DNA from: Octopus sinensis
Lineage: Eukaryota
Length of the DNA stretch: 64,000 nt
Direction of reading: 5' to 3'
Assembly: GCF_006345805.1 (NCBI RefSeq)
Contig: NC_042997.1
Location: 151,156,001 to 151,220,000 of the forward strand
In this document: piece by piece, positions 304-59,727 of the stretch
Numbering within the stretch: the first letter of the stretch is position 1
How the letters are laid out: every line of letters begins with the position of its first letter
The notes under the pieces: generated by a model
Told to the model about the DNA's origin: nothing
Databases searched by the model: none
What the model saw: the letters and a program-made list of their open reading frames with translations, nothing else
Made by a program: the position numbers and the translations under genes

Positions 304-953
304 TTTAAGTGTGTGTGTGTGTATGTACGCTGTATAAACATTCATTTCATACGTATGTGAATGTATTTGTGCTTAATTGTGTGTGTGTGTTTGTTTGTGT
401 TTGTGTGTGTGAGATACAGAGAGAGCGCGAGGGAGGGGAATTATATTTATCTCTCCTTGTGGACATGCGTGTGCGCATATGAATGTGTAGTTGTGATCGG
501 CAGAGGCGGTACATATCTATTATTGAATTCGACCGTATTTACTTGAATTTACAATATGAATTGTAGATAAACGTAACGAAAAACCATAAGCAAAGAAAAT
601 ACGCAAAGATAAGGACCTGAACAATGGATGCATAACAATGATTGATGCAGGTATAGTAAAAAGTGAAGATTATTTGAAATAACAATAAAAAATAGAATGT
701 GAAATAATTCGGAAATCCAAGGCTGAGAAGCCCAGCACAACTGCTAAAGCATAAGCAGTGAGATAGAATGCTGCGAAAATATTCATATTTGTTTAATCTT
801 TTCATCGTTAAATTCTTGTCTAAACCAGATAATTCAGATATATGTGTGTACGTATTTTTGCATGTATATATATATATATACACATTAGTGTCGTATTTTT
901 ACGTTCGCTATTTCCAGTAAATATCGGTACTTAGTTGTGCCATTTATTTACTA

Positions 954-992
<39 letters not shown>

Positions 993-1012
993 TATACGTA
1001 TATATACATATA

Positions 1013-3155
1013 TGGCCTAAATGTCTCTCCTCGCCAGACATCGACGTGAAACTTCAACAATTCATGTCTGTAATGCAAGCCATATGCTACAAATGTGTCC
1101 CAGAGAGAAAGGCCACTGTACACAAGAACAAAATCCCCAGAGAGAGGAAAATCTTAATGAGACGGCGTACGAAATTTTCAAATCGCCTAAACAAACAGAT
1201 TGAAAGCAGTGAAAAGTCCCGCCTAAAAATAAAACTGTTGGAAATCGAAAAATGTCTGCAACTCTCCCATGAAAAAGAAAGAGCAGACAAAGAAGCCTGG
1301 GCTATAGAAAACATAAAATCTAACCCCAGAGCTTTCTACAGATATGCCAAAGAAACAGCTACAGTGCACTGTAGAATAGGGCCACTCCTCGAAAAGGATG
1401 GCACACTTACAGGAAAACCAATGAGGGTAAGTGAAATACTGAATGAGCAATTCAAGAGTGTTTTCACTCCACCCCTTGGGCATCTCCAAATCACCAATCC
1501 AACTGACTTTTTTACCACTGCAGATATAAAATCAGAGGCGGCGACGATAGATTACATCGATATAAAGGAAGACGATGTAACCAAGGCTATAGATGAAATG
1601 AAAACAGACTCAGCTACTGGCCCCGATGGATTCCCGGCAATCCTCCTAAAAGACAGTCCTAGCAAGACCACTGCAGTTCCTCTTTCAGAGCTTCCTTGCA
1701 GCTGGCAAACTTCCAGGAAAACTGAAGGAAGGTAAAATATGCCCCATTCATAAAGGAGGTAGCAGAGCGGAAGCCAAGAACTATAGACCTATCTCTCTGA
1801 CCTCACACATCAGCAAGGTCATGGAACGAATAGTCAGAAGGAAGCTGATCACCTTCCTTGAAGAGAATGACTTGCTGCCCGACACACAACATGGTTTCCG
1901 ACCAGGGAGAAGCTGTTTAACTCAGCTCCTACAACACTATGACTGGGTGCTGAAACGGCTGCTCAACCACTCAAATGTGGAAGTGATATATCTCGACTTT
2001 GCAAAGGCCTTTGATAAAGTCGATCATGGAATGATATGTCACAAACTGCGTGATCTCAACATAGTTGGAAAACTGGGAGAATGGCTTCATGACTTTCTGA
2101 AGGATAGAAGTCAGGTGGTAGTAGCCAATGGGACCACCTCCATTAACACACAAATAGTGAGCGGTGTTCCGCAGGGCACTGTTCTGGGACCACTACTGTT
2201 CATAATGGCCCTCTCAGACATGCCCTCAGCCACGCAGAGAGCCACGATCACAAGTTATGCAGATGATACAAAAGTTTCACAGGCAATACAGAACCCTGAG
2301 GACACTAAACACCTGCAATGTGAGCTGGACGAAATATACAAGTGGGCTGAAAAGAATAGCATGCAGTTCAATGCTGGAAAGTTTCAAGCTTTATACTATC
2401 AGCATGCAAAACTGAATGCAATACCCAATGAATACACTGGACCCGGAGGGATTGCAATCCCAGAGGCACAATCAGTGCGTGACCTGGGTATTCACATGAG
2501 TGATGACGCGACCTTACATGTACATGTTGCTAAACTGACAATGAAATGTAGACGGCTGGCTGGATGGATTCTTAGAACCTTTAGAACAAGAGAACAAGAA
2601 ACCATGATGGTCCTCTGGAAGACACTTGTCCTAAGCCACTTTGACTATTGCTCTCAGCTATGGTCACCATCCAGTGTCAAGTTGATCACAGAACTTGAGG
2701 CGATCCAACGAAGCTACACAAAGAAGATAGCCTCTATGCAGAAAGTAAGCTACTGGGAAAGACTCAAGAGATTAAAATTATATTCCCTGGAGCGTAGGCG
2801 GGAAAGATATGCCATAATATACATCTGGAAGATCCTGGAGGGAAGTGTCCTGAACTTTGGCATCGAGAGTTACGCAAATGCCAGAACTGGGCGCCACTGC
2901 GTGGTGCCTAGGACTCCAAACCTGCCATCAAGATGTAGGACAAGATTCTGTGATAGCCTGGGCTTCCGAGGCCCACAGCTCTTCAATATCCTCCCGAAGA
3001 ACCTGAGAGACCTGCATGGGGTGGATACAGATGTCTTTAAAATGAAGCTGGATCTCTTCCTGTCAGGTGTCCCAGATGAACCAACTTCACGGCAGGAGGG
3101 GCAGATGAGGGAAGCTCTCATGCACCAAATAGCAGTTGCTAGAAAGCCTCCATGA
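1013..3155 (+). pseudogene. Disrupted ORF2 (reverse transcriptase) of the CR1-type LINE
   Basis: ORFs 935-1735 and 1821-3155 join through one frameshift near 1650 (LLK / KTVLARPLQFLFQSFLAAGKLP...KNYRP). The 5' end is lost in (TA)n. Confidence 0.85.
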
Positions 3156-3537: not shown

Positions 3538-4033
3538 TGAATGTGCCTATGTGCACATGGATACCTTTGAAAATATACCACCAACACTCACTCGGGTCTT
3601 TTCATAAACTATGTCAATGTATAATCGTACAATATATTCACTCCGTCAAAAGGGTAAGCCTTCTATCAGTGAATATATGACAACCGAAACCAAATTGTTT
3701 TATGATGTTTTCAACCGAAAATAAATAAACACGACGAGAACAGAAATAAGCATATTGCAGTGTTGATGTCAGTTTGTTGCACAGTGATTCCATTGAAGAA
3801 TATATGCATACAATTAGATACAATTTCAGTTGCCGAACCGTAATAACTGAAACAAGTACATTGTGCCAAAGATAAGGGCGAACAATGAAGGCAACATATA
3901 ATTTATATGGTTCTTTAGGAAAGGGAGGGAGTAGACATGCATAAGTACACTCCCACACAGGTAATCATTGACTGGCGTGCTTGCGATTGTTTTATAAATG
4001 TTTTCCTTTGGAAATGCCATTGTATTCCTCTAC

Positions 4034-4096
<63 letters not shown>
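4034..4096. repeat. (ATCT)n microsatellite, 5' flank of the Tx1 element
   Basis: Perfect ATCT run ending at the element junction. Confidence 0.95.
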
Positions 4097-4754
4097 AGCG
4101 CCAAGAACAGAATCATCACCACCAACAACAAATAAACCAATTCCAACACCAAGAATAACAACGAAGAAGACAAGCACCAAGGATGTAGGAGAGACAATAA
4201 CCACAACAAACCCCCCAGCAACACCCTCCCCGCGCACCACAACAATATCTACAACCGCACAAACAGACCCAGACGCTTTACCCTTACCCCCTGCTGATTC
4301 GTCAGACTTTTCATCTAACGATGAAAGTTCGACAGAATGGCAAATAGCCACAGGGGGTAAAAGAAAAAGATCGAGAAAAACCAAACAAGAAATCGCAACC
4401 AAAGCAGGGAGATACCTGAACCCTGAAAGCTCCATACACAACCAAACAAGCACCAACACCACAAAAACACACACAATGCTATCAGCGATAGACACAAAAG
4501 ACTCCAAACTAATGGAGTACATCACAGGCTACACAAACATCTGTGAAGATGACTTCAAAACGAACAACCATCCACGCACTACACCACCCAAACACATCAA
4601 AATACTACACATCACACAAACACAACACCACAAACTCAAAGCCCTCTTCCCAAATGCTGTAGGGGGTTTCCAAAAATATCTATCCCAAAAACTTTATAAA
4701 AACCTCCTCCAAGACATCAAAGAACGAGGAAGCAAAAACTTTCGACACAAGTAA
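4097..4754 (+). pseudogene. C-terminal part of ORF1 of the Tx1-like element
   Basis: Open frame with no start codon, Thr/Pro-rich, contains basic WQIATGGKRKRSRK. Stop at 4752-4754, 54 nt before the ORF2 ATG. Confidence 0.65.
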
Positions 4755-4808
4755 GTAACTCTCTGTACTTTCCTTTTTGTGTTTTAAAGCACACAACCCA
4801 ATAGAATC

Positions 4809-7800
4809 ATGGTCAAGATTGGTTGTGTGAATGCGCGTGGCTTGGGGTCTCCTTGGAAACAAGGATACCTCCTAAATGACATCAAGTCACACGATTTGGG
4901 AATCATAGCCATAAGTGAGACCAGACTCCACGAGCCACGGGCCCTAAAGTCCATGTTTGGCGGACAGTTCAACATTTATTTTGCTCCCTGTCTGCCGAGG
5001 TTGGGCGGTAGTGGCACCGCGGTACTTTTTCACAAGAGCCTAGATCTCGAAGTCAAGACGATATTCGTAGACCCGGAGGGTAGACTGGCGTTCGTCGACG
5101 GCAGCAATGGGTGCGCTTTACGACTCGTATCAGTCTACGCACCGCCTTTAACAGGTCGGCCGGATTTCTTTCGACGTCTAGAAGTATTCCTGGGAACGTC
5201 TCGTCCTTTACTTTTAGTGGGAGATTGGAATACTACCTTGGACACGCATCTAGACTATGTGGGGAGAGACAAAAACAGAAGGGGATGCAAATGCCTCAGA
5301 GACCTGCTCAGACGATTCCAACTGTCTGACAGGTACCGACTCGACCACCCAAATGCACCAACGTGGACATGGAGCAACTGCAGTGGGTCGTCGAGATCGT
5401 ATCTAGATAGGATACTGTGTAGGACAGTAGACAAGGATAACTTAGGATGTCCACAATTCCATACAGTCAGCTACACGGATCACAAATTCGTGACGTGTAC
5501 GCTAGACTTAGATAAGGCACATCGACAGGGTCCTGGGTACTGGAAACTGAACGCATCATTCCCGTCCAGACAAGTTTTCAGAGACCGGATTAGCACACTA
5601 GTAAAGAGGGCTTTGACGGGAGCCATCATCAACAACAAATGGTGGTTTGCCCTCAAGAGAGCAGTAAAAGCAGAAGCGATTAGATACAGCAAAGCACTAG
5701 CCATAGATAGAAATAGAGTAGAGGGTGAGCTAATTAAGAAGCTAGAAGAGGCAATTAGAAGCGGCATCGCATCCGACGTTTTGGCGGCGAGGTTGGCCCT
5801 CGACCAACACTTCAACGCCAAACACGAAGGATATGCTGTCAGAGCTAGGATGCGTGCTCTAAGGAACGAAGGTGTTGGAGCCGCGAGAGAGGCCCGGGTG
5901 GCGGAGGCGCAGCAGGGCAACAAAGCCACCATTCGGTCTCTGGTAGATGAACAAGGGCGCGAATTGCTCGAGCCCAGCAAGATGTGCGAGACATTTCAGC
6001 GGCACTTTGCCCGACTGTACGGGACGAGTGGTGAGCGTGAACGCAGGGTGGATTTCAGTGCCTACCTGCACAGCCTACCACGACTCTCGGCAAGAGAGGC
6101 AGAGTGCTGCGAAGGTGCCATCACGGCGGCGGATGTGCAGGACGCGATGGCAGAATGCTCGAGAGACAAATCGCCGGGTTTGGATGGTCTGCCCTAAGAG
6201 TTTTACAATTGTATGCCAGACTTGTTTGGAGACGTCTTGGCAGCGGTATACTGCAACTGGCAGCAAAACGGGAGCATACCCGGTTTTGTGAGTCGAGAAG
6301 CTGTAACACTGCTGAAGAAAGATCCAAACAAGGGGAACATTATAGATAACTTTAGACCAATCACTCTGCTCAATGCAGACCTGAAAATTTTGACAAAGGT
6401 GTTAGCCAAGAGGTTGGCGCTTGTCATCGAGAAACTGGTCGACAACGCACAAACGTGCGCCGTGCCGGGCCGGAGCATCCATGACAACCTCCATCTGATG
6501 CGCTACATCATAGACGGGGTAGTTAACGAACCTGGCATGGGTGGGGCCCTGATCAACTTGGATCAATCGAAAGCCTTCGATAGGGTAGACCATCGACACT
6601 TGGAGGCAGTCCTGAGAGCGACTGGTTTCGGTCCCGTCTTCCGCGGCTGGATAGCTGCCTTGTACAGAGGCATCCGTTCGGTAATTCGCGTGAATGGACA
6701 TCTATCGAGACCTTTCGACATTGCAAGTTCGGTCCGTCAGGGATGCCCCCTCTCGGCGCTTCTATACGTATTGACTCTTGAGCCACTACTGCGGAAGCTG
6801 GCGACCCTGAGGGGCATCCCGCGAGAATTGGGATGCGGGACGAGCGTCTGCATACGCGGACGACGTCACCGTCATAGTGTCAAGCCACGAGCACATCGAG
6901 CGGGTCGGCGAGACACTGAAAGACTACGAAGCGGTCACAGGAGCAAAAATCAACCGGGAAAAGTCAGTGGGCTTGCGGCTCGGCACCTGGAGAAGCAAGC
7001 CCATGCAGTCCACCAGTACCTCCGTCGTGGGACGCTGGACAGACGGCCCGGTTGAGTTGCTCGGGGTCTGGTTCGGTCCGGACCTCCAAATGGAGAAGAA
7101 CTGGAACGAGATAACGAGTAGGGTGGTCAATCTCGCCCAGCAATGGGCCGAGAGGAAACTGTCCCTAAAAGGTCGGGCGGAGGTGGCGAACACGTACATC
7201 GCGTCCATCATCTACTACCCCCTGACCGTCGTACCTTGTCCCGACCCTACCATCACCAAACTAGAACGCATCCTCTTCCGCTTCTTGTGGAAAGGATGCG
7301 TCCCGATGGTCAGGCGATCCATTTGCTGTCAACACCCGTTAAAAGGAGGGCTGGGCATGCCGTGGTTGATGATGCGCAGACACGCGCTGAGACTGCGACA
7401 TCTCCGGCTCTATGTAGACAACGGTGAACAGGTGTGATCGCCGTTTGTGAGGCACGCATTCCCGCAACTTGTCTCCATGACCGAACTGCAGTCGTGGATC
7501 AAAAAGAGGCCGAGGAAGGGCGAATGGCACCGCGAGTGTCGCGTTGCTCTCAAGCAACTCTGCCGTCCCGGGTCGACCTTGAGTGACTTCAACACAACCA
7601 AAGCATTCTATAGGGGATTAGTGGAGGGGAGGTACGACGACGATCTCGGGGCAAACCTGGGCGTCGACGAGGAATACATGACCCGCCTGTTTCAAACGAC
7701 TTTCGGCCCGGGACCTATGGACAACTTCCAGAGATCCCTGGCCTGGCGGTGCTACCGAAAAGCGCTACTCGTTCGGGATAAGCTCTATAGGCATGGCTCG

Positions 7801-8238
7801 AGAAACACGGGGCCGACCTGCCCGAGATGCGGGCAGAGCGACGAAACCGCTCTGTACGCAATCGTGCAATGTCCAGCAATTTCCCACCTGTGGGCTTATG
7901 TTGAACGACTGCTGTTACGTGTGGGACGTGTCGGTTTATCAGCCGAGTCTATCGTTAATATCGTCACGCCTCCTTCCTTCAAACGGGAAGGAAGAGCTAT
8001 TTTTATCATACTTGTGGCTATGGCGAAAGAATGTATCTGGTGGACGCGCCTGAAAGGATTAGAGACAAACACTTTCCTCTCTGGTCAATCTCTCATCAAC
8101 TTCTTCAAGTATCACTTGAGGAGGAAAGTGAGAGTAGAGAGGCAAGTTTTGTCTAGTGAATGTTTTAAAAAAAGATGGGTGAATGTAGCAAGGATGGCAC
8201 GTATGAATGACGAAGCCACCTTGACTATGATTCTATGA
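4809..8238 (+). pseudogene. ORF2 (APE endonuclease + RT + zinc knuckle) with three frame lesions
   Basis: APE motifs VNARGL, ISETRL, VYAP, VGDWN, YLDRIL, TDH. RT motifs NFRPITLLNADLKIL, LDQSKAFDRVDH, VRQGCPLS, SAYADD. Knuckle CPRC...(H>Y)AIVQC. Lesions: TAA at 6195-6197 (GLP*E), frameshift near 6846, TGA at 7435-7437. Confidence 0.9.
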
Positions 8239-20819: not shown

Positions 20820-20901
<82 letters not shown>

Positions 20902-20902
20902 G

Positions 20903-20992
<90 letters not shown>

Positions 20993-21001
20993 TTATTAGT
21001 A

Positions 21002-21045
<44 letters not shown>
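20480..21045. repeat. Compound trinucleotide microsatellite (CAT)n-(CCT)n-(ATT)n
   Basis: Direct reading; explains the poly-H/S/L/I ORFs. Confidence 0.95.
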
Positions 21046-23431: not shown

Positions 23432-23610
23432 TATGACGGGTTTCTTTCAGTTTCCGTCTTTAGAATCTACTCACAAGGCTTTAAACGGGCCGAGGCTATA
23501 GTAAAGGACACTTGATCTAAATACCGCACAGTGGGATTGAACCTTAATACGAAACCTTATGACTTAGAAGAAAACTTCTTACAACAGAGCCTTGCATGTG
23601 CCTATGTGTG
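23432..23610 (-). mobile_element. 5' half of a tRNA-derived SINE (family of 32961-33374 and 42746-43164)
   Basis: GACGGGTTTCTTTCAGTTTCCGTCT...CTCACAAGGCTTT...CCGAGGCTATAGT is the reverse complement of the family body. Confidence 0.75.
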
Positions 23611-32661: not shown

Positions 32662-32764
32662 AATAAATAAATAATAATAATAATAACAATAATAATAATA
32701 ATAATAACAACAACAACAACAACAACAACAGCAACAACAACAACAACAACAACAACAACAGCAA

Positions 32765-32960: not shown

Positions 32961-33374
32961 AGGCGTAGGAGTGGCTGTGTTGTAAGTAGTTTGCTTTAAA
33001 TGCCGTCTTGGCAAATTTGATGAAATAAAGCAGCTTGCTAACGAAACGCATGGTTCCGGGTTCAGTCCCACTGCGTGACATCTTGGGCAAGTGTCTTCTA
33101 CTATAGCCTCGGACGGAAACTGAAAGAAGCCCGTCGTATATATGTATATATATGTATGTGTGTATGATTCTGTGTCTGTGTTTGCCCCCCCCCCTAATAT
33201 CGCTTGACAACCGATGCTGGTGTGTTTACGTCCCCGTAACTTAGCGGTTCGGCAAAAGAGACCAATAGAATAAGTCCTAGGCTTACAGAGAATAAGTCCT
33301 GGGGTCGATTTGCTCAACTAAAGGTGGTGCTTCAGCATGGCAACAGTCAAATGACTGAAACAACTAAGAGAGAG
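32961..33374 (+). mobile_element. tRNA-derived SINE (octopus OR-type), near full length
   Basis: A-box-like TGGCTGTGTTGTAAG and B-box-like GGTTCAGTCCC. Internal TA/TG microsatellite. 3' tail GGTGGTGCTTCAGCATGGCAACAGTCAAATGACTGAAAC. Other copies occur in the window. Confidence 0.85.
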
Positions 33375-33475: not shown

Positions 33476-33509
33476 ACAACAAACAAGATGAGGATAAGTA
33501 CCAGAGGCA

Positions 33510-34140
33510 CAAAAGAACCTGATGCACAAAAGGTATAGACATGCAGGAAAAGCAGTAAAATGTGACAACCGATGGAGACTTTGTGGAGTTCACACTGAAT
33601 ATATCACCCACATCATAAGCAGTTGTCTGAAAATATCATCACCGTATTATCTACTGATGACGTGTTATGTAATCCGCCAGAAGGATAGTCCCAAGGACAG
33701 CGAAATAAGAATCCACAATAAGGTAGAAACTATAGCAACTCATAATGAAAAAGGAAAACTGGTTGAATCTCCCAGTGAAGACCTAAATAAAATGTAAACA
33801 CAACAGACATGATATAATGATTTAGGATAGAGAAGAGAAACTGTGCACTATTGTGTAAATTACCTGCCCAGCTGATGTTAACATAAAGCTGAAGATCAAT
33901 GAAAAAGAGAACACTTATGCTGAACTATTAAGAAATCAGAAGTTACGCTATCCAGATTACAAGTTCAGATTATAACTGTAATTAATAGGACCCTGTGATA
34001 TGTAACACACTGTTTAAATACTAATCTTGAGCAATTAGGCTTCTCAAAACGGGAAAGGAGAAAGCTGATTCGACGAATACAGATCCAATCCATTACTCGA
34101 ACTGTAAAAACCTGTAAAACTATCCAGAAGTTTATGATTT
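33510..34140 (+). mobile_element. 3' fragment of an RLE-type non-LTR retrotransposon
   Basis: Degenerate knuckle (W)RLC...THIISSC, then HNRHDIMI..REEKLCTIV.ITCPADVNIKLKINEKENTY, an RLE PD..D..K-type region. Confidence 0.65.
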
Positions 34141-42745: not shown

Positions 42746-42923
42746 CCAGGAGTGGCTGTGTGGTAAAAAGCTTCCTTCACATCAACGTCGTTCCGGGTTC
42801 AGTCACAATGCGTGGCACCTTGGGCTAGAATTTTCTACTATAGCCTCAGGCCGACCAAAGCCTTGTGAGTAGATTTGGTAGACGAACGCTGAAAGAAGCC
42901 TGTCGTATATACATGTATATATA

Positions 42924-42957
<34 letters not shown>

Positions 42958-43164
42958 CCTTTGTGTCTTTGTTTGCCCTCCTCCACCACCATCGCTTGAC
43001 AACCGATGTTCGTGTGTTTACGTCCCCGTAATTTAGCAGTTTCACAGATAGAATGAATACCAGGCTTACAAAGAATAAGTACAGGGGTCAATTTCTTCGA
43101 TTCATATGCGGTGCTCCAGTATGGCACCAGTCAAATGACTGAAACAAGTAAAAGAATAAAAGAA
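42746..43164 (+). mobile_element. OR-type tRNA-derived SINE, near full length
   Basis: GGAGTGGCTGTGTGGTAA head, GGTTCAGTC box, internal (TG)n, tail CAGTCAAATGACTGAAACAAGTAAAAGAATAAAAGAA. Confidence 0.88.
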
Positions 43165-46110: not shown

Positions 46111-47290
46111 GTGATCACAAAAATAGGAATCTGCGAAGTAAACACAGCGATGTCACACGGCACACAGCCTCATGAAGGTCACTGCTAGCTCTCACTATGC
46201 ACGCAACCGTGTACTGCCATCTGAAGGGTGAACAGGACTTTTTCTTGACCTACTTCCGAATTTATTCTCTGCACGTTGTTCAGCAATGATGTTATGGAAG
46301 GAGAACTTTTGTTTCATTTTGCTGAATGATCTATTCCCTGTTTTATCAACCAAAAGAATAGCAGAAAAATTCTTAAATATTTTCTGCTTTACAAAATGGA
46401 TTACAGCTCCAGTTTTAGCTGTGAGCGTATCTGATTGTTAAATGTGCAGACAGCGGGAGAGGTTTATAAAGTTTTGGAAACAAGCACAATAGAAAAGTGT
46501 AATAAGTATATTCGTTAAAAATTACTTGCTTATGCTTGAGAAAATACTAATTTCCCACCAATCAGAAATGACCGCCATCCGTAGTACACTAAACTATATG
46601 CGAACAGATGAAAGCATTGTAACTGGATCTTGTGTAAACAAAATTCGAGAATTTATCTCTCCAACCAAAACTCATCACCTTCTTGAAAGTCGCTGGAGGC
46701 GGAAGGCTAGGACGGGGAATAATGCTCTGTACGTAAGCAAATTTGATAAAGTAGCTGTGTAACAGAAAAGCCTAGTTGTTGCATATTTAAAACTTCAGCT
46801 GCAGTTAAGAAGGGAGGAAGAACGATCCTTATTACAAGCAGTTCTTACACTATTTTTCAAGATTTTTAGTATATATTCTATGTATATTCAATCTCTCTCT
46901 ATGTGATTGTCTGTTTTGGAGGGTTTTTTTCAGTCGTATGTATGTGGATGGCAGATCATTGAGGAGAAATTAATAAAACGTTAAATAATTTTGTAACCAA
47001 TATACTTTCAATAGCTTCGACACCAAAAAAAAGAGTACATTCCTGCGGTGTTGCAGCACTTTCTATAGAAGAAGTGGAAACTTTAGTATTGCGTAGATGT
47101 TTTCTGTGAGTTATGTTGATAACTAAAAAAAAGTAATACGTTTAGTGTGTTCAGTTGATAGCATAATTGCGATGATGGTATAAGAAGTACTTAAACCTAC
47201 GTAGGCTATTGTTTTAGACTGCACAGAGAATTTTCAGCCATGATTTTGTTGTGTTTTGTTTACTTTTTATTATATCTTTTATTTTTTATC

Positions 47291-47496
47291 TTTTACTTGC
47301 TTTAGTCATTTGACTGCGACCATGCTGGGGTATCGCCTTGAAGTGTTTTAGTCGAACAAAATCGACACCAGGACTTATTTTCTAAAGCCTACTCTATCGG
47401 TCTTTTCTGCAGATCTGTTAACGGGGACGTAAACACCGGATGTCAAGTGGTGGTGACGGTCAAACACAGACACAAAGACACACATGCACACATACA

Positions 47497-47530
<34 letters not shown>

Positions 47531-47536
47531 CATACA

Positions 47537-47589
<53 letters not shown>

Positions 47590-47733
47590 GTGTGTGTGTG
47601 TGTGTGTGATAGTATTCTTTTAGTTTTGGCCTGCCAAATTCACTCACAAGAATTTGATCGGCTCGAGGCTATAACAGAAGACAAAGAACTATGTCGCTGG
47701 GAAGCAAGCATCTTACCATGCACCCACGCCTGT
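47291..47733 (-). mobile_element. Diverged OR-type SINE with an expanded internal microsatellite
   Basis: Reverse-complement tail GGCGATACCCCAGCATGGTCGCAGTCAAATGACT. Body motif GGGGACGTAAACAC. (TACA)n(TG)n core. Confidence 0.8.
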
Positions 47734-48859
47734 AGTGCCTCAGTTATTTATATTAATATTTTCCAGTAAACTCATTATTAAAACTCATTTTCACAGCACC
47801 ACTGAGTGCAATATTGAGCACAATCCTGATGCGTAATCTTGAGCACAATCTTGATGCGTATTGTTCATTTTCTCCTTCCTGTTACACTGAAAGTATACTT
47901 TGTCACGTATGTACAGTGGCTAGTAGTGTTATTTCCTCTTAACTTTTCCTATTTGTAAACTATCTGCGTCTGTTATTGTATTTTTTCCTATGTTTTTAAA
48001 TTGCTTCCAAAACGTCTATAAGTATGGTTTCCGTTGTCTGCATACCACTCAAAGAACGCTTATTAGCATATGTGTTGTTTTTGCTTTCATTCCATACAGT
48101 CTAATGATATCTGTTTTCAGATCTTTATTTTTATAATTTCTATATGTTGTTCAGAAATACATTATCGTCTGCAGGTAGTATTATTCTAAAGAGGAAGCAA
48201 TTTCTTTTGTAGTGAACCTTGACAGTAATATTGTCTCCAGCATCTATTTGCAAATTGACAAATCCCAGAATGTGGTGGCTTTGTCACAATCACTTTTCTC
48301 TTCGTATTATATAATACAGGCATAATTTCTAATGTATTCAATCCCATTATACCATGCTTGTAGAAGTATACTCTTTTGGCTAAATTTCGACAGACAAAAA
48401 CAATAAGAATAATTTGTATTTAATAGCTTCCTCATATTTTCTTCCTACATAATGTAGTTTGTTCTATGACCTGTTTCTTGTGCGAAGTCTTTCAAACTGT
48501 ATTACAAACAATTATCGTTTAGTTTCAACGTTATATTTCGTGCTTCTCCCCTAGTGCTTGCTGTAATTTGATAGTTGTACCTGGCACTTAGTTCAGCTTT
48601 TTAGGCATTGGCCGTATAGAAATCGTTTGTGATCGTTTTGCTACCGCATTCTCTCACCACATTTTAAACTAACTGTTATCCTTTACAACATTTCTTTCGT
48701 CTTTTTCTCTCACCTGCTGACAAACCCACAAATTTCAGGTGTCAAGCTAGAGTTTATTGATTTCCTCGAATGACAAAAATAAAAGTATTAGCTTCGTTTT
48801 GTTTTTAAGTCTTTCTATTTTCCATTCCTACATATGTTTTGATAATTCTATGGTATATA

Positions 48860-50614: not shown

Positions 50615-50867
50615 ATATATTAACCTTAAGTTTATATTTCTATTTTGATTTTCTATTATGAGTTCAATAAAATACTTTTGGATGAATTCGAACTAATTTA
50701 CCTAAAAGGATTTCATCACTTTAAGCTAATGAAATATTTCCGATCTTTCGAAGAACGTTGAATCAGGCGACATATGATTTCCTATGTCGATATAGTAGCT
50801 GCGTTGTTGTGGCTGTTATTTATGCTGTCCTTGTTTTTGTTATAGTTGTTGTTGCTGTTGTTGTTAT

Positions 50868-50872
50868 TATCA

Positions 50873-50940
<68 letters not shown>
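50868..50940. repeat. (ATT)n microsatellite; (TAA)n 3' flank of element A
   Basis: Direct reading. Confidence 0.95.
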
Positions 50941-50943
<3 letters not shown>

Positions 50944-53900
50944 ACACACTCAACAGATTTGAATTTTGGAGAAGAAAAGAATACTCACTTCAGGCTACAA
51001 GTAGATTTAAATGCCAAGAACCCTCCTAAGTATCCTGCCTGTTCCTAATAACAGTGATTTCTGCAGCTGTACTATACTGGATTTTATGCCTATTCCCTCT
51101 AAACATATTTTTAGGGATAGTTCCCGGTGCACATAAAACTACTGGGATACATTTTACCAGCACTTTCCATAGTCTCTGTAATTCGATTGTTGTAAGGTTA
51201 TAGTACTTTGCTATTTTTCTATACTTCTCATATTAAATATTTCATTATTTAGGATTGTAAAGTCTTGCACATTTTATTCTCTTTATCTATTAGTATCAAA
51301 TGAAGCCTTCTAGCATCTATTACTCTGTCAGTTTGAATGATAAAGTCCAGCAACATCTTGTATTTCTTACCTTTTATTTTCTTTTACTAGGGTCATGTTC
51401 ATACCATTTATCAGTATGTTCACATCCTTACATTCTGTATAGATCCCAGTGGATTGCTCTCACTAGATTGTCATGTCTTTTTTGTATTCTTTCTGTACCA
51501 GCATGCTACAATCATCTATTGATCTATACTGGGAATCTACTTGGTTTTTGTCAATTTTGACAATCATCCAGTTATTCCTTAACACTTGATCTTGTGATGC
51601 TACTAACATACTATCTGTCTCACTCTTCAGATTTCCTTTCTGCATCAATAACCACGTCACATTATTACTATTTGCTGAAACTATCTATGAGAATCTACAA
51701 TGCCAGTCAGATAATTTCTGTTATTTTTCCTGGTTTTTAAGTTCGTGTGGTGTTTTGGTTTTCCTATGCCTTGCTATAACGTGACTAGCTTTCTTCACTA
51801 TTACGTAGATAGTAGTTTATATCTACTTTAGCAAATATATTGAATTCCTACATAGCTCCTCTGTTCCAATTTTTACTAATTCAGTATCAAAGTAATGATA
51901 CTACCCAAGTATTTCCAACCTTCACTAGATTCGGACCATATGGTTTTGACTTCACTAGCTACCTCACACTCAGGTTTAGTTTTCATAACTATAATTAATA
52001 CTCTGTCAGATTCTAATACTCCTAGATAGTTATAACACTCTCCTCCTTTCAATGAATTTAATATCTGGCCATATGGTAACTGGATGACTTCGCAAGTGAC
52101 TACCTGTCCCCTTCTCATGATTAATATTGCACACTTATCTATACCAAATTCTATGCTAATTTCTTTGCTCAAGATTCTAACTGTCTGTATTAAGGAATCT
52201 ATCTCCTTTTCATTCTTACTAAAGATCATCCATGTAGAGCAAATATATAATTTTCCCACTACTATTGCCTTTGCCTTCCTTAATACTAAACTGAGGAGTA
52301 TCAAACATAGACAAATATCAAAGGGGACAACAAGACTCCCTGAGAAATTCCTCTTTTGACATTAGCTTTCCCGAAGAGTGTGTCACATGAGTAGAGATCT
52401 ACTTTCCATTTCTTCATGATTAAGCTCATTAATATTCTTATGTTGACTGCCACACTGAATATATTCAAACATTAATTTAGCCATAAGTGTGGGATCATGT
52501 CATATTATCTATCCATGCTATTGTTAAATTTTTCTTTCTAGATTTTACTTCATTTATAACTGCTTTATCTATATATAGTAGATCATGCCTTTCTCTAACC
52601 TTCTTCCTGCAACCCCTTTGTTCCTCTGGTAGTAAATTCTGGTTGTCAATGTGCTCGAAATGCTTTCTGAAAGTATTCCTGTTAACAACTTCCACACTAA
52701 TGGTAAGCAAGTGATTTGTGTGCAAGTGTTAGCAGTATTACCCTTGCTCACATCCTTCATAATGAGTATTGTCCTCCCTTTATTATTCCTCCGTTAAAGC
52801 ATTCCTGAAGTTGTTCCCTCCGTCTCCCATGTAAAATATTGAATTTCTTTAGCTGGTGCTGGGCCCTTTCGATTCGGCACTTTCCTAACACCTTACTCAT
52901 TAATGCACTAGTTAATGTTAGATCTGGCTAGTTATCACTCATTATTTACTTCTTCCCTCACTTTCTTTAACCATAATGTATCTCCGTTATGATTGACATG
53001 TTTATCCCAAATATTAGTAGCGAACTTTCTAGATTCTTCTGCATCAGGTTTCTCATCTTCAGTATTTCGTTCTCCACTATTTATTTGGTTATATAATCTC
53101 CTCTGGTCTGTCTCAAATAATCTATTTTTGTTGATACTAATCTAATTTTGTGATATCTGGAGAACTTGCCTGCTACTGCTATGATACGCTGTTTCAAGAC
53201 TTCTATTATTCATCCCTAATCCTTTCTCTTTGACTAATTATATTTCCTCGAGGGAAGATTTGCATCATGTGTTTATTTTCCAGGCTTCTATTCTACTCAT
53301 ATCTAGTCTTAAAATCTCCACTTTATTTAGCAGTTATCTTTTACACATTTTCACTTTTTTAATTTTACCCTGTGAGATATCTAATCTCCTGATGACTACT
53401 ACCCTCCTGCATAGATCAATAATTTAGTGTCTCCCAATTCTTTAGTATCTATCCTCCTGAAAAAGAATGCACTTTCCTTGTTATTTCTGGTAGCGTCTTT
53501 CTGTTGATGTCTTTTAATGCTGGCAAAATTATCATACGTCTTTACTGATTACTTCCATCAATACATCTAAAATATTTTGATCTTCCTCCCATAAATTATT
53601 TACGTTGTTGGTGCCAGTTGTTGCATACTTATTGGTAGTGGTATTATTATTTTTTCCTTCGGGTTCTTCATTGGCTTAAACTGTAACACTTATGTTGTTG
53701 TTTTGTCTTTCCCACTGCCTCGTCTTTCTTTTCCAGTTGCCTATTCTATCTCCAATCTTGTCATCGACTTTCTTCTCCTAATGTCATTAGCTTGATCAAC
53801 TAATCTCTGATCAGTCATTTTAAACATACCCTTGTCTACTCAAGGTTTTAACATCCGTTTTCTATAGCTTATTCTTTTAGGTTCACTTTCTAAGTAGCAC

Positions 53901-54050
53901 TGCATCACTATTTGCTTTCTTCGTTGGTCCACTTTCTCACCCTTACTCTATTATCTGCTGATGCTGTATTAGGATGACAGGTGTGGTCAGTCTCAATCTT
54001 TGCAGATCCACTACCCAGCAGTAGGCCTTCCTTAAAGGTCCAACTTCATT
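50941..54050 (-). mobile_element. Element A: old, near full-length but heavily decayed R4/Dong-like RLE retrotransposon
   Basis: Collinear motifs RVRKWTNEE..VMQCYL (Myb-like N-terminus), ITCLPLVWKLLTG, LPEEQRGC, RGISQG..LSP, LYMDD (52225-52239), FGIDKC, GNLKSETDSMLVASQDQ, KRHD, QKSLLLGTA. Many stops and frameshifts. Confidence 0.82.
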
Positions 54051-54206
54051 TTCGCTATTACAACCAGAGTTTCTTCAGAAACTCCTGACTCTCATCAAAT
54101 GAGGTAAAGTAACGTTCTACACGATCGTTATCACCACTATTACATTTCGACGTTTGAATGTTTTAAGCAACTTTGTATTTCATCATTTGTCGCACCTCAC
54201 TGCTGA

Positions 54207-54236
<30 letters not shown>
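54207..54236. repeat. (ATT)10 linker between elements A and B
   Basis: Ten perfect ATT units. Confidence 0.95.
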
Positions 54237-54239
<3 letters not shown>

Positions 54240-54333
54240 TAGTTTTATTTTTATAGCGTGCTTTCACTTCACTACCGAGCACAGCTCTGTGTGCCTTGGG
54301 TATGTGCTGTGATTTGTTGTGATGCTCTGATGG

Positions 54334-57300
54334 TTATTGTATGGAAAGTGTTCTGCGTAGGATGTGTGCAGTGCCTAGTAGTGCAATTTTCTGTATGTTA
54401 TATGTGTTTGTAAGTCCTGGTGTTTTTGTTATGTATTTGTCTGAATATTTTTTTATCATGCCTAATGCACCTACTATGATAGGAATTGTTTCTGTTTTCA
54501 GATTCCACATTCTAGTTAACTCTATTTCCAGGTCTTTGTATTTTGAAAGGTTCTCCATTTCTTTTAGAGACACGTTGTCATCAGCCGGTATTGATACATC
54601 AATTAGAAAGCATTTTTTTTCTTCATGGTCTCTGACAACTATATCTGGTCTGTTGGCCTTAATTTCTCTATCTGTGTGTATCGGCATATCCCAGAGTATG
54701 GTTGCTTTCTCGTTTTCTGTGACCTTTTCTGGTGTGTGCCTATACCATCTTTTTTCTGTTGTTATTCCATAATGTTGGCATAGCTTCCAATGTATGTAAG
54801 TTCCAACTCTGTCATGTCTGTGAATATATTCCTTCTTAGCCAGGACTGGGCAGCTAGAGATAATATGATTTATTGTTTCTTGTCCATCTCCACATATTCT
54901 GCAGTACTTGTAATATTTCTTTTCATTACATGTCTTTGGTAATTTCTGGTGGGGAGGCTTTGGTCTTGTGCTGCAATTAAAAATCCCTCTGTTCTGCTTT
55001 GAGTCCTGAGCTTCTCAACCATTGCTGGGATTTTTCTTGTCTATTTCTTTTGCGTTTAGTTTAGTCCAGTATTTACCATGAAGGGGCTTTTCTTGCCATC
55101 GTTTTATCATGGTTCGTTGCTGTTCTATTTTTAGTTTGGATTTCATTTGTTTTATAGCTTTTGTTGTTTCTTCATCTTCTTCTTCTTCTTCATGTTTATT
55201 AGGTGGTATGATTTCTTGTTTGTATTTGTCAGCTTCCTTAAATACTGAGAACAGTTTTTTGTTTTGCTCGTGTTTTGCCGCTATCTGGATCAGCTTTCCT
55301 TCCTTCTGAAGTAGATATTTTTGCAGTCCTATGGTGGTTATTTTATAGTAGTTTTCCAGCTGTATAAGTCTTCTACCACCTTCTATACGTTTTATATATA
55401 GTCTTTCTATGTCAGATTTTGGGAGATGCATCCAGGATCCTGTCACTATTTTTCTTGTTTTCCTATCTATTTTGGACAGTTCATATCGTGTCCAGTTAAG
55501 GATATTGTAGATGTAACTTATAACTGGGACAGCTAAAGTGTTGATACCTATTATCTTGTTTTTAGCATTGAGCTCTGTGTTTAGTATTGATCTGACTCGT
55601 CTATAATATTCTTTTTTTATTTTCTCTTTCATTTGTGGTGTGTGTTGTGTTTATCTAGTTCATGGATTCCTAAGTATTTGTAAGTTTGGCTTTGGTCTAA
55701 TTCTTTTATTTCATTTGCTTCATCTAGTGTGATGTTGTTACTCTTAACTAGTTTTCCTCTTTTCATGGTTACTTTGGCGCATTTTTCTAATCCAAATTCA
55801 TATCTATTTCTTTGGTAAATCCATGAACTGTCTTTAATAGTGTTTCCAGCTGTTTGTCATTTGCAGCGTATAGTTTTAGGTCATCCATATATAAAAGGTG
55901 GCTGATCGTTTTGCCGTAACATTTATATCCGCATCCAGTTCTATTTAGCATATCAGATAGAGGTGACAGTGCCAAGCAGAAAAGGAGTGGAGAGAGCGTA
56001 TCTCCCTGGAATATTCCTCTTCTAATGTAGATGTCTTTGGTTTTCATGAGTCCCTCTTTTGTTTGGAGGTGTAGGACTGTTTGCCATTTATTCATAGAGT
56101 GCTCTATGAATTTTATGATTGTTGGTGCTACTTTGTTAATGGCTAGTGTTTCGAGGATCCATGTGTGGGGGATGCTATCAAACGCCTTTTTGTAGTCAAT
56201 CCAGGCCATACTGAGGCCTTTCTTCTTTCTGTGGCTGTCTTCAGTTATGGCTTTATTAATCATTAGTTGATCTTTACAGCCATATGAGCCTTTGCGGCAT
56301 CCTTTCTGCTCTTCTGGGAACAGTTTGTTTTCGTCCAGGTGCTTGTTCAGCCTTTGTGATATCACTGCAGTAAATGCCTTGAACATAGTAGGGAGGCAGG
56401 TTATTGGTCTGTAGTTTTCTGGTTTTTCTGTTTCATTTGATTTGGGAATTAAGATGGTTTTCCCCTTCGTGAGCCATTCAGGCATTGTCTCTGGCTCTGC
56501 TAGTACGTTGTTAAAGTTTTCAGCCAGCTTTTTGTGCATTCCTGTTAGATATTTCAACCAGAAGTTGGGGATCTTGTCATGCCCAGGTGCCTTCCAGTTG
56601 CTTAGTCTTTGCAGTGCCTGGGTGACCTCTTCAGTTGTTATGGGGGTCCAAATTTGTTCAGATGCCGAGTGTGTTATTTTGATACTCCTTTTTTTGGTGG
56701 TTCGTTCGCCGACCATATTTCTCCTCAGAATTCTTCCAATTCTTCTGCCGTTGGTGCTGCAGTGACTTCTATTTTATTTTTGCCCAGTTCTTGGTAGAAC
56801 TTTTTGGGGTTAGAGTTGAACTTTTTGTTTTCTTCAAAGAAGCGTTGGCGTTTCTTGTACCGGCGGATCATTTGTGCTTTGGCAAGGATATCTTGCTTCA
56901 GCTTTTCTTTTATTTCAGGCAAATCTTTCTCTGTGATGTTATATTTGCGGAGTATTTTTGTTCTCTTTTTGTTGCTCAGTAGCGTTGATTGTTTGCTGAT
57001 TTCATTAAGAATCGACAGGTCTTTTCTATTTTTTTTTATTTTGCTTTGGATGTTATTTATCCACAGGGTTTGTTTGGGTGGTGGTACTCCTGTTTGGGCG
57101 GGTTTGGGTGAGTATCCAGCTTCTTTTGTGGCTGCAGTGGCTGCTGCGTATATTAGGTTATTTAGCTCAGTGATATCACTTTTTTTTGATTCAGTGGCTA
57201 TCAGTTCAGTGACGGCTAGGTTTATGCTGTTTATAATAGGTGTTGTTATTTCGTTTATTTTTATTCTTGGGAGGTATGGTCGGTGGTCCATTTGAGCTCT

Positions 57301-57972
57301 GTGGTTTTCAGTCTTTGATTATTTTATTTTTTATATTATCATAATCATTAGGCTCCCCTTCGTTGTTTACATCGTGTTTGTTGGGAATGTTGCGTTTGTC
57401 TTCGTGTTTTACAGTTTCAGTGTTTATATTATTGGGCATTGTTGTGTGGCTTCTATCTACATTTTCCTGGTGTATGTTTTCTTTTAGGTGTTCTATTTCT
57501 ATTTCTGATATTTTTTTGTGTTGAGAATGTATCTTCGTACGTTAGCTAATTTATTAGGGTTCATTGCTGTATCCAAGTCTAAATCTCTATTATTTTCCTT
57601 CCATATTTTATATGTATGTGTTGTTGTATTTTCATTTTTGGGGTAGAGTACTGCTGTGAAGTATGCGTGTAAGATAGAAATGTATTCCTCACGTGTCCAT
57701 TTACGTCTTTTGGGTTTTATTTGCGGGACATGAGGTACAACGTCCGGCCCATTATTTTGACGGTCGTCATTTTCGTAGGGTACCGGTCCGTTTATTTCTG
57801 TTGTCACATTATTTCGCACGTGTAGTTTTTCGTACATTTTTTGTTGTAGGTTTAATGTACGTACCGCTCGATTGTTATTCTTGGGTTGAATAGTATCGGT
57901 GGCATTTAATTTCTTCGTAGTTCCTTTGTACATGGTGTTTGGGGTCGGAGATGATCGTGATGTTTCACGCAT
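54334..57972 (-). pseudogene. Polyprotein of element B, at least six frame lesions
   Basis: KRRKWTREE (Myb-like); NWKAPGHDKI, NYRPITCLP, EEQKGC, AWIDYKKAFDS, RGIFQGDTLSP, HLLYMDDL (RT); CRICGDGQETINHIISSC (CCHC); NRPDIVV..CFLIDVSIP..E.LSKY (RLE). Confidence 0.92.
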
Positions 57973-58174
57973 GTTTACATGTGTTCCGTTAGAGGTGGAG
58001 ATGATATCGAGTCAAAATACATCATTTCGTTTCGAAAATAGTAATAAATTTCAATTTGTATTACTTACTCGGATACAGTCCAATTCTTTGTTAGTAAAAC
58101 TTTGGCTCCATAGGATGTCCTTGTTTTCGATGTTTGTGGATAGGTTTCGGAGCTCTGAATTTTCCTTCTTACAT

Positions 58175-58418
58175 CTTAAAAGTCCCCCGGTGTTCTCTCT
58201 TAAAAGTCCCCCGGTGTTCTCCTCTTAAAAGTCCCCCGGTGTTCTCCTCTTAAAAGTCCCCCGGTGTTCTCCTCTTAAAAGTCCCCCGGTGTTCTCTCTT
58301 AAAAGTCCCCCGGTGTTCTCTCTTAAAAGTCCCCCGGTGTTCTCTCTTAAAAGTCCCCCGGTGTTCTCCTCTTAAAAGTCCCCCGGTGTTCTCCTCTTAA
58401 ATGTCCCCCGGTGTTCTC

Positions 58419-58419
<1 letters not shown>
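58175..58419 (-). repeat. Ten tandem 24/25-bp units at the 5' end of element B
   Basis: Plus-strand unit CTTAAAAGTCCCCCGGTGTTCTC(C)T. Lengths in order 24,25,25,25,24,24,24,25,25,24. One substitution, in the outermost unit. Confidence 0.97.
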
Positions 58420-58480
<61 letters not shown>

Positions 58481-58509
58481 TATTATTATTATTATTGTTA
58501 TTATTATTA
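58420..58509. repeat. (ATT)n linker between elements B and C
   Basis: Direct reading. Confidence 0.95.
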
Positions 58510-59340
58510 GTGATTTTCTTCGCAGAGCGTCTATCACTAGGGATATATTACGGTGATAGCTGTTCACTACGAGTCAACTAAGGTAACACCTATTATTTTT
58601 CGAGCCCCACCCGGAGTAATCGAGCGGTCCCAAGTGTTTTCTCCAAGTGCTCCACCCTTATTGCAGCCTATATTTGTTCCATATACTTCTCAAATTTGTT
58701 ACTCACTGTTCTCACTGTTCCCAGGACTCCGACAATCTTTGGCACTGCTACCAACTTTTTCAGTGTCCACAATTGCTAAACTTCTCAAGCTAACCTGTCA
58801 TGTTTATCGACTTTTCTTCCTTCCTTATCGCCTGCCTTGTTGTCAGCTGGGCATGCTATATCTATGATGTAGCATCGTTTGCTTTCTTTCTCAATTAACT
58901 ATGTCTGGCTTTCTATTCTCTGTCTCATGGTCGCACTGAATCATAAAATCCCATAGGATCGTTGCATTATCATTTTCGGTGATGCCATCGGGTTTACGTT
59001 CGTACCACTTTTTGCTCTGTCAATTCCATACTTGTTGCAAAGGGTCCAATGGACAATCCTTGCTATAATGTCATGACGTCTCATATTCTTTCTGGCTTGG
59101 TGGCGTATAGTGACTGGTAATATGCTATACTATTTCACCATTTTGTCCACAAATTCTGCACTTATCACTTTCTGATGTGGTGTCGATTCTATATTTGATG
59201 TAATTCGTTCTTAATGTTTGCTCTTGGGCAGCACATATTAGAGCCTCCGTTTCCGGTTTTAAATGATTTTTTGTCATGCATAACCATCTTTTTCTCTGTC
59301 TTATCTTCAACATCCCTAGCATGTTTTCCGAGGGGGAAGA
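58510..59340 (-). mobile_element. Element C: 3' fragment of a third R4/Dong-like family
   Basis: HLKPETEALICAAQEQTLRTNYIK..ID..SDKCRICG, KWYERKP..ITENDNATILWDF, RKPDIV..KRCYIIDIACPAD, LGTARLLR, then UTR and (TAA)n. Confidence 0.82.
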
Positions 59341-59543
59341 GGACTGATTGGACGCAAACACAGCATTAGAGCACAAGAAATCAACATCGCATAGTATGTA
59401 AAAACAAATGCCGCAGAACCATTATTATTGGCAGTAAGAAGGTCAGGCTTCTGTAGGATGGAAGATTGCAAAGATAAAGCACTGTATATGCACTTTAGAA
59501 TGAATGAAACTGAAAATAGTTTTATAAAGAAAAATTATTCATA

Positions 59544-59727
59544 TTCTTCTTCTTCTTCTTATTATTATTATTATTATTAGTAGTAGTAGTAGTAGTAGTA
59601 GTGTAGTAGTAGTAGTAGTAGTAGTAGTAATAGTATTGAGTGAGTGAGTGATTGAGTGAAAGAGCAGTGTATGCTATCGAAGAAGAAGAAGAAGAAGAAG
59701 AAGAAGAAGAAGAAGAAGAAGAAGAAG

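What the first reader, a model, noticed from the sequence alone, without database searches (positions are those of the whole stretch)
50868..59580. Head-to-tail stack of three different (TAA)n-linked R4/Dong retrotransposons
Seen on the minus strand: (TAA)n near 59570, about 200 bp unassigned, element C 3' part, (TAA)n, element B full length, (TAA)10, element A near full length, (TAA)n. All three share orientation, are clearly different families and differ in decay. Established: Dong (R4 clade) inserts into TAA repeats through its RLE endonuclease. Inference: each insertion leaves TAA at both ends and regenerates the target, so successive families build a polarised, self-extending array of about 8.5 kb. 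This resembles telomeric retrotransposon arrays but at an interstitial microsatellite, and read-through from upstream copies might drive downstream ones.
Basis: partly seen in the sequence, partly recalled or inferred. Interest (0 to 1): 0.8.

Follow-up and report, generated by a model that had tools for sequence, protein, structure and literature searches.

The report
Stacked dead Dong retrotransposons in TAA repeat
Three unrelated, now-dead copies of a jumping gene that lands only in TAA repeats sit head-to-tail in one microsatellite, which is the expected result of its target preference and is also seen in other animal genomes.

Summary
On the minus strand, four (TAA)n arrays (7, 30, 10 and 26 units) bracket three co-oriented LINE copies. 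C is a 3' fragment of about 1.0 kb. B is 4.2 kb and structurally full length. A is 3.3 kb and near full length.

All three have the Dong/R4 layout: reverse transcriptase, then a CCHC knuckle and a restriction-like endonuclease. A and B also carry an N-terminal motif matching the published Myb/SANT-like domain. They share no DNA similarity, so they are different families. All are coding-dead.

B is the least decayed and lies in the middle. The stack therefore grew by insertion into an internal TAA linker, not by polar addition at one end. Its TAA total (73 units) matches an unoccupied array in the same window (about 70 units), so target amplification is not shown here.

Relatives elsewhere carry sense-strand TAA after the ORF in 35 of 51 loci, against 1 antisense. 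TAA-linked multi-family stacks recur in independent assemblies. Misassembly or chance is therefore unlikely.

No 5' ribozyme or promoter was found, so read-through drive remains speculation. This is an ordinary, well-documented example of a known kind.

The parts
59559..59579 (-). Upstream (TAA)7 linker at the truncated 5' end of element C. It is followed by (GAA)5 at 59540-59558 and preceded by (CTA)n and (GAA)26.
58510..59533 (-). Element C: a 5'-truncated Dong-like copy. The CCHC + RLE domain lies at 59334-58599, with a 3' UTR of about 100 nt. 59334-59533 is unassigned. The C-terminal domain has 4 stops, 3 frameshifts and 10 codon gaps over 215 codons.
58419..58509 (-). (TAA)30 linker between the 3' end of C and the 5' end of B
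58174..58418 (-). Ten near-identical copies of a 24/25-bp unit (GAGAACACCGGGGGACTTTTAAGAG) forming the 5' terminus of B. Origin and role unknown.
54237..58173 (-). Element B body, structurally full length:
- N-terminal Myb/SANT-like region, 58011-57502
- RT, 56773-55790
- CCHC + RLE, 55014-54337
- 3' UTR with conserved hairpin, 54336-54237

It has at least 7 frameshifts and 1 stop, and is the least decayed of the three.
54207..54236 (-). Perfect (TAA)10 linker between the 3' end of B and the 5' end of A
50942..54206 (-). Element A: a near full-length but heavily decayed Dong-like copy of another family.
- RKWTNEE motif, 54045-53911
- RT, 53357-51882
- C-terminal domain, 51780-50998, with the CCHC cysteines lost
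50864..50941 (-). (TAA)26 after the 3' end of A, continuing into (GAT)2 and (CAA)n and then unique DNA
47885..48485 (-). Remnant D: a fourth, very decayed Dong-like C-terminal fragment in the same orientation, 2.4 kb beyond A's tail. It is not TAA-linked to the stack.
33492..33957 (+). Remnant E: a decayed Dong-like CCHC + RLE fragment on the plus strand, downstream of a plus-strand (TAA)11 at 32672-32707. Its orientation again matches the nearest TAA strand.

Best explanation
One compound microsatellite containing a (TAA)n tract was hit at least three times by different families of Dong/R4-clade non-LTR retrotransposons.

How it works:
- They integrate by target-primed reverse transcription specifically into TAA repeats, always with their sense strand on the TAA strand.
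- Every insertion therefore splits a TAA tract into two tracts that remain valid targets, and all copies in one tract point the same way.

Order of events here: C and A are the older insertions, and B later landed in the TAA tract between them. All three have since decayed, so the locus is a graveyard and not an active array.

Shown:
- the anatomy and domain content;
- that the three belong to different families;
- their relative decay;
- the TAA rule in independent loci;
- recurrence of such stacks elsewhere.

Inferred:
- the TPRT mechanism and the role of the RLE, by homology with R2 and from the literature;
- the insertion order.
For: Domain content:
- RVT_1 at E=2e-29.
- The C-terminal profile has conserved Cys-X2-Cys-X8-His-X4-Cys and D...D...K columns. 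It matches the CCHC + RLE region of solved R2 proteins at E=1e-6.
- The RT is nearest to R2, at 6e-28 against 1e-17 for L1.
- No APE domain is present.
- The N-terminal domain is homologous to that of full-length relatives, at E=5e-11. It matches the Myb/SANT-like domain reported for R4/Dong (PMC7998251).

TAA rule:
- The B-family copies L001 and L002 end with the same ...ACTACTGAA + (TAA)n.
- 35 of 51 relatives have sense TAA within 300 bp after the ORF, against 1 antisense.
- More than 20 truncated copies also have TAA directly at the 5' junction.
- The literature states that Dong targets (TAA)n in insects, molluscs and cnidarians (PMC3812793, PMC7998251).

Independent insertions:
- A, B and C share no DNA similarity.
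- Disabling lesions per 100 codons in the C-terminal domain are B 1.1, A 3.1 and C 3.3. In the RT they are B 0.8 and A 2.0.

Recurrence:
- Head-to-tail, TAA-separated, multi-family stacks occur in L086, L087, L088 and L090. These contigs come from ENA assemblies of other hosts.
- L075 shows the same arrangement.
Against: - No reference Dong or R4 sequences were available, so clade placement rests on architecture, target and literature, not on a tree.
- No 5' HDV-like ribozyme, which is known for Bombyx Dong, was found in A or B.
- Ages are inferred from lesions and not from divergence to family consensus. B's frameshifts could partly be assembly errors.
- TAA at the 3' end may be partly the element's own tail and not target.
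- No reads or orthologous empty site were available to verify the assembly or the insertion order.
Confidence: 0.85

Rival explanations
1. Tail-targeting instead of microsatellite-targeting. The elements carry (TAA)n as their own 3' tail, and new copies simply prefer to nick in the A/T-rich tail of a resident copy. The stack would then grow from tails without any ancestral TAA microsatellite.
For: - Every copy ends in TAA.
- One external stack holds far more TAA than a normal array, with blocks up to 372-507 bp in L088.
Against: - Single truncated copies elsewhere have long TAA upstream that is preceded by non-Dong DNA (L004, L085).
- The window has an unoccupied (TAA) array of about 70 units with similar compound flanks.
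- The stack's TAA total (73 units) equals that array, which is what simple subdivision predicts.
Confidence: 0.1
2. Functional read-through array. Promoter-less downstream elements are transcribed from upstream copies and released by 5' self-cleaving ribozymes, like an interstitial version of telomeric retrotransposon arrays.
For: - Bombyx Dong has a 5' HDV-like ribozyme that cleaves at the TAA/Dong junction (PMC3774820).
- Full-length relatives start right after TAA with nested GC-rich helices that show compensatory changes (L009, L016, L087, L090).
- All copies in a stack share a strand.
Against: - In this window all three copies are coding-dead.
- Rfam finds no ribozyme.
- A descriptor that recovers a control ribozyme finds none in the stack.
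- B's 5' end is a 25-bp repeat array with no pairing partner downstream.
- No expression data are available.
Confidence: 0.1
3. Assembly artefact. Separate Dong copies were joined through their shared TAA repeats.
For: The joins are exactly at simple repeats of 30-90 bp, a classic place for chimeric joins.
Against: - The window spans many longer microsatellites without breaks.
- The same architecture appears in independent long contigs of other hosts and in other metagenome contigs.
- The unique flanks on both sides are continuous.
Confidence: 0.04
4. Ectopic recombination between TAA arrays at different loci brought pre-existing elements together.
For: TAA arrays provide homology. L091 shows an inverted, mirrored arrangement with a palindrome at the switch point.
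Against: - It would need two independent exchanges that preserve orientation, with no other rearrangement.
- Simple re-insertion explains all junctions.
- The linkers are short.
Confidence: 0.03

Closest known systems
Dong / R4-clade non-LTR retrotransposons (Dong of Bombyx mori, DongAg, DongBg; annotated as 'Dong-R4' in cephalopod genomes)
   Same: - RT followed by CCHC + restriction-like endonuclease, with no APE.
- N-terminal Myb/SANT-like motif without zinc fingers.
- Sense-strand (TAA)n at both ends.
- Frequent 5' truncation.
- Conserved 3' UTR.
   Different: - No 5' HDV-like ribozyme was detected in these decayed copies.
- B begins with a 10x 25-bp tandem array that I did not find described for Dong in the papers read.
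- Clade placement by phylogeny was not done.
R2 elements in 28S rDNA
   Same: R2 is the closest solved relative for both the RT and the CCHC + RLE region. It is site-specific, uses TPRT, and depends on co-transcription plus a ribozyme.
   Different: The target here is a microsatellite, not rDNA. There are no N-terminal zinc fingers. Identity to R2 is low.
Tandem insertions of other target-specific LINEs (Utopia in U2 snRNA genes, PMC4640811; telomeric TRAS/SART and HeT-A/TART arrays, from my own knowledge)
   Same: Repeated insertion into a repeated target gives co-oriented head-to-tail arrays with target sequence between the copies.
   Different: - The locus is interstitial, with unique flanks on both sides.
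- There is no evidence of a host function.
- Several unrelated families are mixed in one array.
- The youngest copy is internal, not terminal.

Membership tests
R4/Dong clade LINE | Reverse transcriptase domain of non-LTR type | tested here: met
   RVT_1 at E=2e-29 in B. A's RT aligns to Dong-like RT proteins. The nearest solved RT is R2, at 6e-28.
R4/Dong clade LINE | CCHC knuckle plus PD-(D/E)xK restriction-like endonuclease C-terminal to the RT, with no APE endonuclease | tested here: met
   Cys38/Cys41/His50/Cys55 and Asp124/Asp139/Lys columns are invariant or at least 90% conserved in a 21-sequence alignment. The profile hits the R2 CCHC + RLE region at E=1e-6. There is no Exo_endo_phos hit in B's pieces. 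The domain is present but damaged in A and C.
R4/Dong clade LINE | N-terminal Myb/SANT-like domain without zinc fingers (PMC7998251) | tested here: inconclusive
   B residues 86-167 are homologous to the N-termini of four full-length relatives, at E=5e-11 to 2e-8, with the motif KRxKWTxEEY...NKLANVRR. A has RKWTNEE. Pfam gives no Myb hit even at E<=1.
R4/Dong clade LINE | Insertion into (TAA)n with the element's sense strand on the TAA strand (Dong lineage) | tested here: met
   All junctions of A, B and C abut TAA. Among relatives, 35 of 51 have sense TAA and 1 of 51 antisense. The 5' junctions are also at TAA.
R4/Dong clade LINE | HDV-like self-cleaving ribozyme at the 5' end (PMC3774820) | tested here: inconclusive
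   Rfam gives no hit at E<=10. My own descriptor gives no hit in the stack, although it recovers a control ribozyme. On larger sequences a slightly looser version of that descriptor gave many off-junction hits, so it is not specific. Both copies are decayed, and B's 5' end is rearranged.
R4/Dong clade LINE | RT phylogeny groups it with reference R4/Dong and apart from R2, NeSL, HERO and CRE | not testable with these tools
   No reference Dong or R4 sequences could be fetched. Relatives include Exaiptasia diaphana proteins, a species whose Dong-like elements are used as R4/Dong representatives in PMC7998251.
Telomeric retrotransposon array | Located at a chromosome end and extends it | tested here: not met
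   The stack is flanked by non-repetitive DNA and other transposons on both sides within the window.
Tandem duplication / satellite of one element | Units share DNA sequence | tested here: not met
   blastn finds no similarity among A, B and C beyond a 70-bp patch. The same holds within the external stacks.

The most novel reading that the evidence does not exclude
TAA-specific Dong lineages build self-reinforcing 'nests'. Each insertion donates its own TAA tail, so occupied microsatellites become larger and more numerous targets. Promoter-less members of a nest are expressed from read-through transcripts and released by 5' ribozymes. This would be an interstitial analogue of telomeric retrotransposon arrays. 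B's 25-bp monomer array could be an alternative 5' promoter module, as in mouse L1.
Probability: 0.12. Interest if true: 0.55.

Novelty: new member of a known kind. Interest (0 to 1): 0.3.

Why it matters
The locus is a clean, checkable example of how strict target specificity shapes genome architecture. A harmless microsatellite becomes a co-oriented pile of unrelated retrotransposon families.

It is useful in three ways:
- For annotation, because TAA-linked stacks should not be merged into one element or mistaken for a satellite.
- For dating insertions, because nested order can be compared with decay.
- As a place to look for intact Dong copies with their 5' ends.

It does not change what is known about Dong/R4 biology.

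Tried and rejected
- Rfam at gathering and at E<=10 on the stack, and at E<=1 on 13 relative loci, found no HDV-like ribozyme.
- My own HDV-like descriptor gave 0 hits in the stack and recovered the CPEB3 control. A slightly looser version then gave many hits away from TAA junctions in larger loci, so it is unspecific and I dropped it.
- I tested whether B's 25-bp monomer is homologous to the 5' ends of relatives. It is not significant (shuffle p 0.04-0.8), and there is no pairing partner downstream.
- The monomer was not found in genome contigs or viral contigs.
- I looked for Dong RT between A's tail and remnant D and found none, so D is not part of the linked stack.
- I looked for further copies of families A, B and C in the window and found none.
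- Literature searches for a prior description of Dong stacks found none in the searchable library. The original Dong paper is not held.
- Accession-based host identification failed. The only hints are an Argonauta hians best named hit at 51% and a SINE that I recognise from memory as octopus-like.
Full report
**1. What is there**

Tandem Repeats Finder and a regex scan find four TAA arrays on the minus strand:
- 50864-50941: 26 units.
- 54207-54236: exactly 10 units, perfect.
- 58419-58509: 30 units.
- 59559-59579: 7 units, followed by (GAA)5.

Reading the minus strand 5' to 3', the order is:
- (GAA)26, (CTA)n, (TAA)7, (GAA)5
- element C (58510-~59533)
- (TAA)30
- ten copies of a 24/25-bp unit (58174-58418)
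- the body of element B (54237-58173)
- (TAA)10
- element A (50942-54206)
- (TAA)26, (GAT)2, (CAA)n, then unique DNA

**2. What the elements are**

B's central piece is a reverse transcriptase (Pfam RVT_1, E=2e-29). Among solved structures its nearest relatives are R2 proteins (E=6e-28), ahead of L1 ORF2p (1e-17).

B's last 226 codons have 847 database relatives, from a holothurian, a sea star, corals, an anemone and a tunicate. A 21-sequence alignment has:
- conserved Cys-X2-Cys-X8-His-X4-Cys columns (Cys38 and Cys55 invariant; Cys41 and His50 at least 90% conserved);
- conserved Asp and Lys columns after an RPD motif.

Its profile matches the CCHC knuckle and restriction-like endonuclease of R2 (E=1e-6). 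No APE domain is present.

B's N-terminal 80 residues are homologous to the N-termini of four full-length relatives (E=5e-11 to 2e-8). They share the motif KRxKWTxEEY...NKLANVRR. This matches the Myb/SANT-like domain reported for R4/Dong (PMC7998251). A carries RKWTNEE at the corresponding place.

A and C align to the same C-terminal domain, and A also aligns to the RT.

Together with the TAA flanks, this is the Dong/R4 layout. I could not make a tree with reference sequences, so clade membership rests on architecture, target and literature.

**3. Different families, different decay**

blastn finds no similarity among A, B and C except a 70-bp patch. Protein identities are 25-46%.

Frameshift-aware alignment to intact relatives gives the following for the C-terminal domain:

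| Element | Stops | Frameshifts | Codons |
|---|---|---|---|
| B | 0 | 3 | 280 |
| C | 4 | 3 | 215 |
| A | 2 | 4 | 192 |

A has also lost the CCHC cysteines.

For the RT:
- B: 0 stops and 4 frameshifts in 511 codons.
- A: 1 stop, 5 frameshifts and 20 codon gaps in 293 codons.

B is thus structurally full length but dead, and it is the youngest. It sits in the middle. A same-family copy from another sample (L002) is 92.4% identical over 962 bp, and B's three C-terminal frameshifts are single-base deletions relative to it.

**4. Is TAA the target?**

B-family copies L001 and L002 end with the same ...ACTACTGAA followed by (TAA)n.

Among 79 metagenome loci that encode relatives, 51 have at least 200 bp after the ORF end:
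- 35 carry sense (TAA)>=3 within 300 bp, typically 75-105 bp after the stop.
- 1 carries the antisense repeat.

More than 20 truncated copies also have TAA directly at their 5' junction. Single copies in Oculina, Asterias and Holothuria do as well.

The literature states that Dong targets (TAA)n in insects, molluscs and cnidarians (PMC3812793, PMC7998251).

In the window, a fifth remnant (E, plus strand) lies downstream of a plus-strand TAA array, so it also follows the strand rule.

**5. Are stacks general?**

Yes. In 20-kb loci from long contigs of ENA assemblies:
- L086 has 3-4 co-oriented copies, each ending just before a sense TAA block.
- L088 has 6 copies in 10.8 kb.
- L090 has 4 copies.
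- L087 has 2 copies.

Segments within a stack share little or no DNA similarity. These loci share nothing with the window except Dong coding similarity of about 66%, so they come from other hosts. L075 is another head-to-tail pair.

Mixed orientation also occurs (L047, L064, L091). In each case the element is flanked by TAA on its own strand. Orientation is therefore dictated by the repeat strand and not by the array.

Decay is not monotonic along the stacks.

Four of the nine long loci hold a single copy (L003, L004, L085, L089).

**6. Mechanism**

The best explanation is repeated, independent, strand-specific TPRT into one TAA tract. Each event splits the tract into two still-valid targets.

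The window's stack holds 73 TAA units in total. An unoccupied compound array at 20826-21045 holds about 70. Simple subdivision is therefore enough here.

L088's TAA blocks of up to 372-507 bp hint that tails can add target, but I did not test this.

**7. Read-through idea**

Bombyx Dong has a 5' HDV-like ribozyme that cleaves at the TAA junction (PMC3774820).

Full-length relatives (L009, L016, L087, L090) start right after TAA with nested GC-rich helices of the P1/P3 type. These show compensatory differences.

In the window I found no ribozyme. B's 5' end is a repeat array with no pairing partner. Nothing here shows expression.

**8. Context and verdict**

The host is probably an octopod cephalopod. 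The evidence is an Argonauta best named hit and a SINE I recognise from memory.

Octopus vulgaris is reported to have 5 recently active Dong-R4 families with 1129 insertions (PMC13282606). Multiple hits on TAA tracts are therefore expected.

I found no paper that describes Dong stacks explicitly. Tandem insertion of other target-specific LINEs is described (Utopia, PMC4640811).

The polarity, self-extension and read-through claims are not supported by the data. The finding is an instance of a known kind.

Noticed in passing
window 58174-58418 (-): Ten copies of a 24/25-bp unit, 98% identical, form the very 5' end of element B, directly after (TAA)30. They are far more homogeneous than B's decayed coding region. 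They could be a monomer-type 5' module or a post-insertion expansion.
   Followed up: partly
window 20826-21045: An unoccupied compound (TAA) array of about 70 units on the same strand as the stack, flanked by (GAT)n-rich DNA. It is a plausible picture of the pre-insertion state of the stack locus.
   Followed up: partly
window 3981-8238 (+): A GC-rich (47-56% against a background of about 35%), nearly intact APE-type LINE. Its ORFs are 257, 462 (Exo_endo_phos), 280 (RVT_1) and 263 aa (zf-RVT). The best named relative is from Argonauta hians (51%). A second LINE RT lies at 935-3155 (+).
   Followed up: partly
window 33040-33340, 42790-43155, 47277-47760, 23432-23543: Several copies of one SINE-like repeat, 68-80% identical to each other. 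One abuts remnant D and one separates remnant E from its TAA array. From memory it resembles the abundant octopus SINE.
   Followed up: no
window 54237-54336 (-), with L001 and L002: The B-family 3' UTR is as conserved as the coding region. It folds into a hairpin (GGCACA...TGTGCT) with one compensatory pair among three copies. It may be the RT recognition element.
   Followed up: partly
L009 54-120, L016 53-106, L087 8651-8705, L090 7222-7276: Full-length relatives begin right after (TAA)n with nested helices: CCCCG...CGGGG around CAG-GTTGGCGT-CTG. Changes on both sides keep the pairs intact. This is a candidate 5' ribozyme that Rfam models do not detect.
   Followed up: partly
L091 1-18743: Two opposed Dong stacks (minus copies with TTA blocks, plus copies with TAA blocks) meet at a near-perfect 90-bp palindrome at 6257-6347. 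This suggests an inverted duplication.
   Followed up: no
L088 9119-19980: Six co-oriented Dong-like copies of different families lie in 10.8 kb, with TAA blocks up to 372 and 507 bp. This is far more TAA than in the window's stack.
   Followed up: partly
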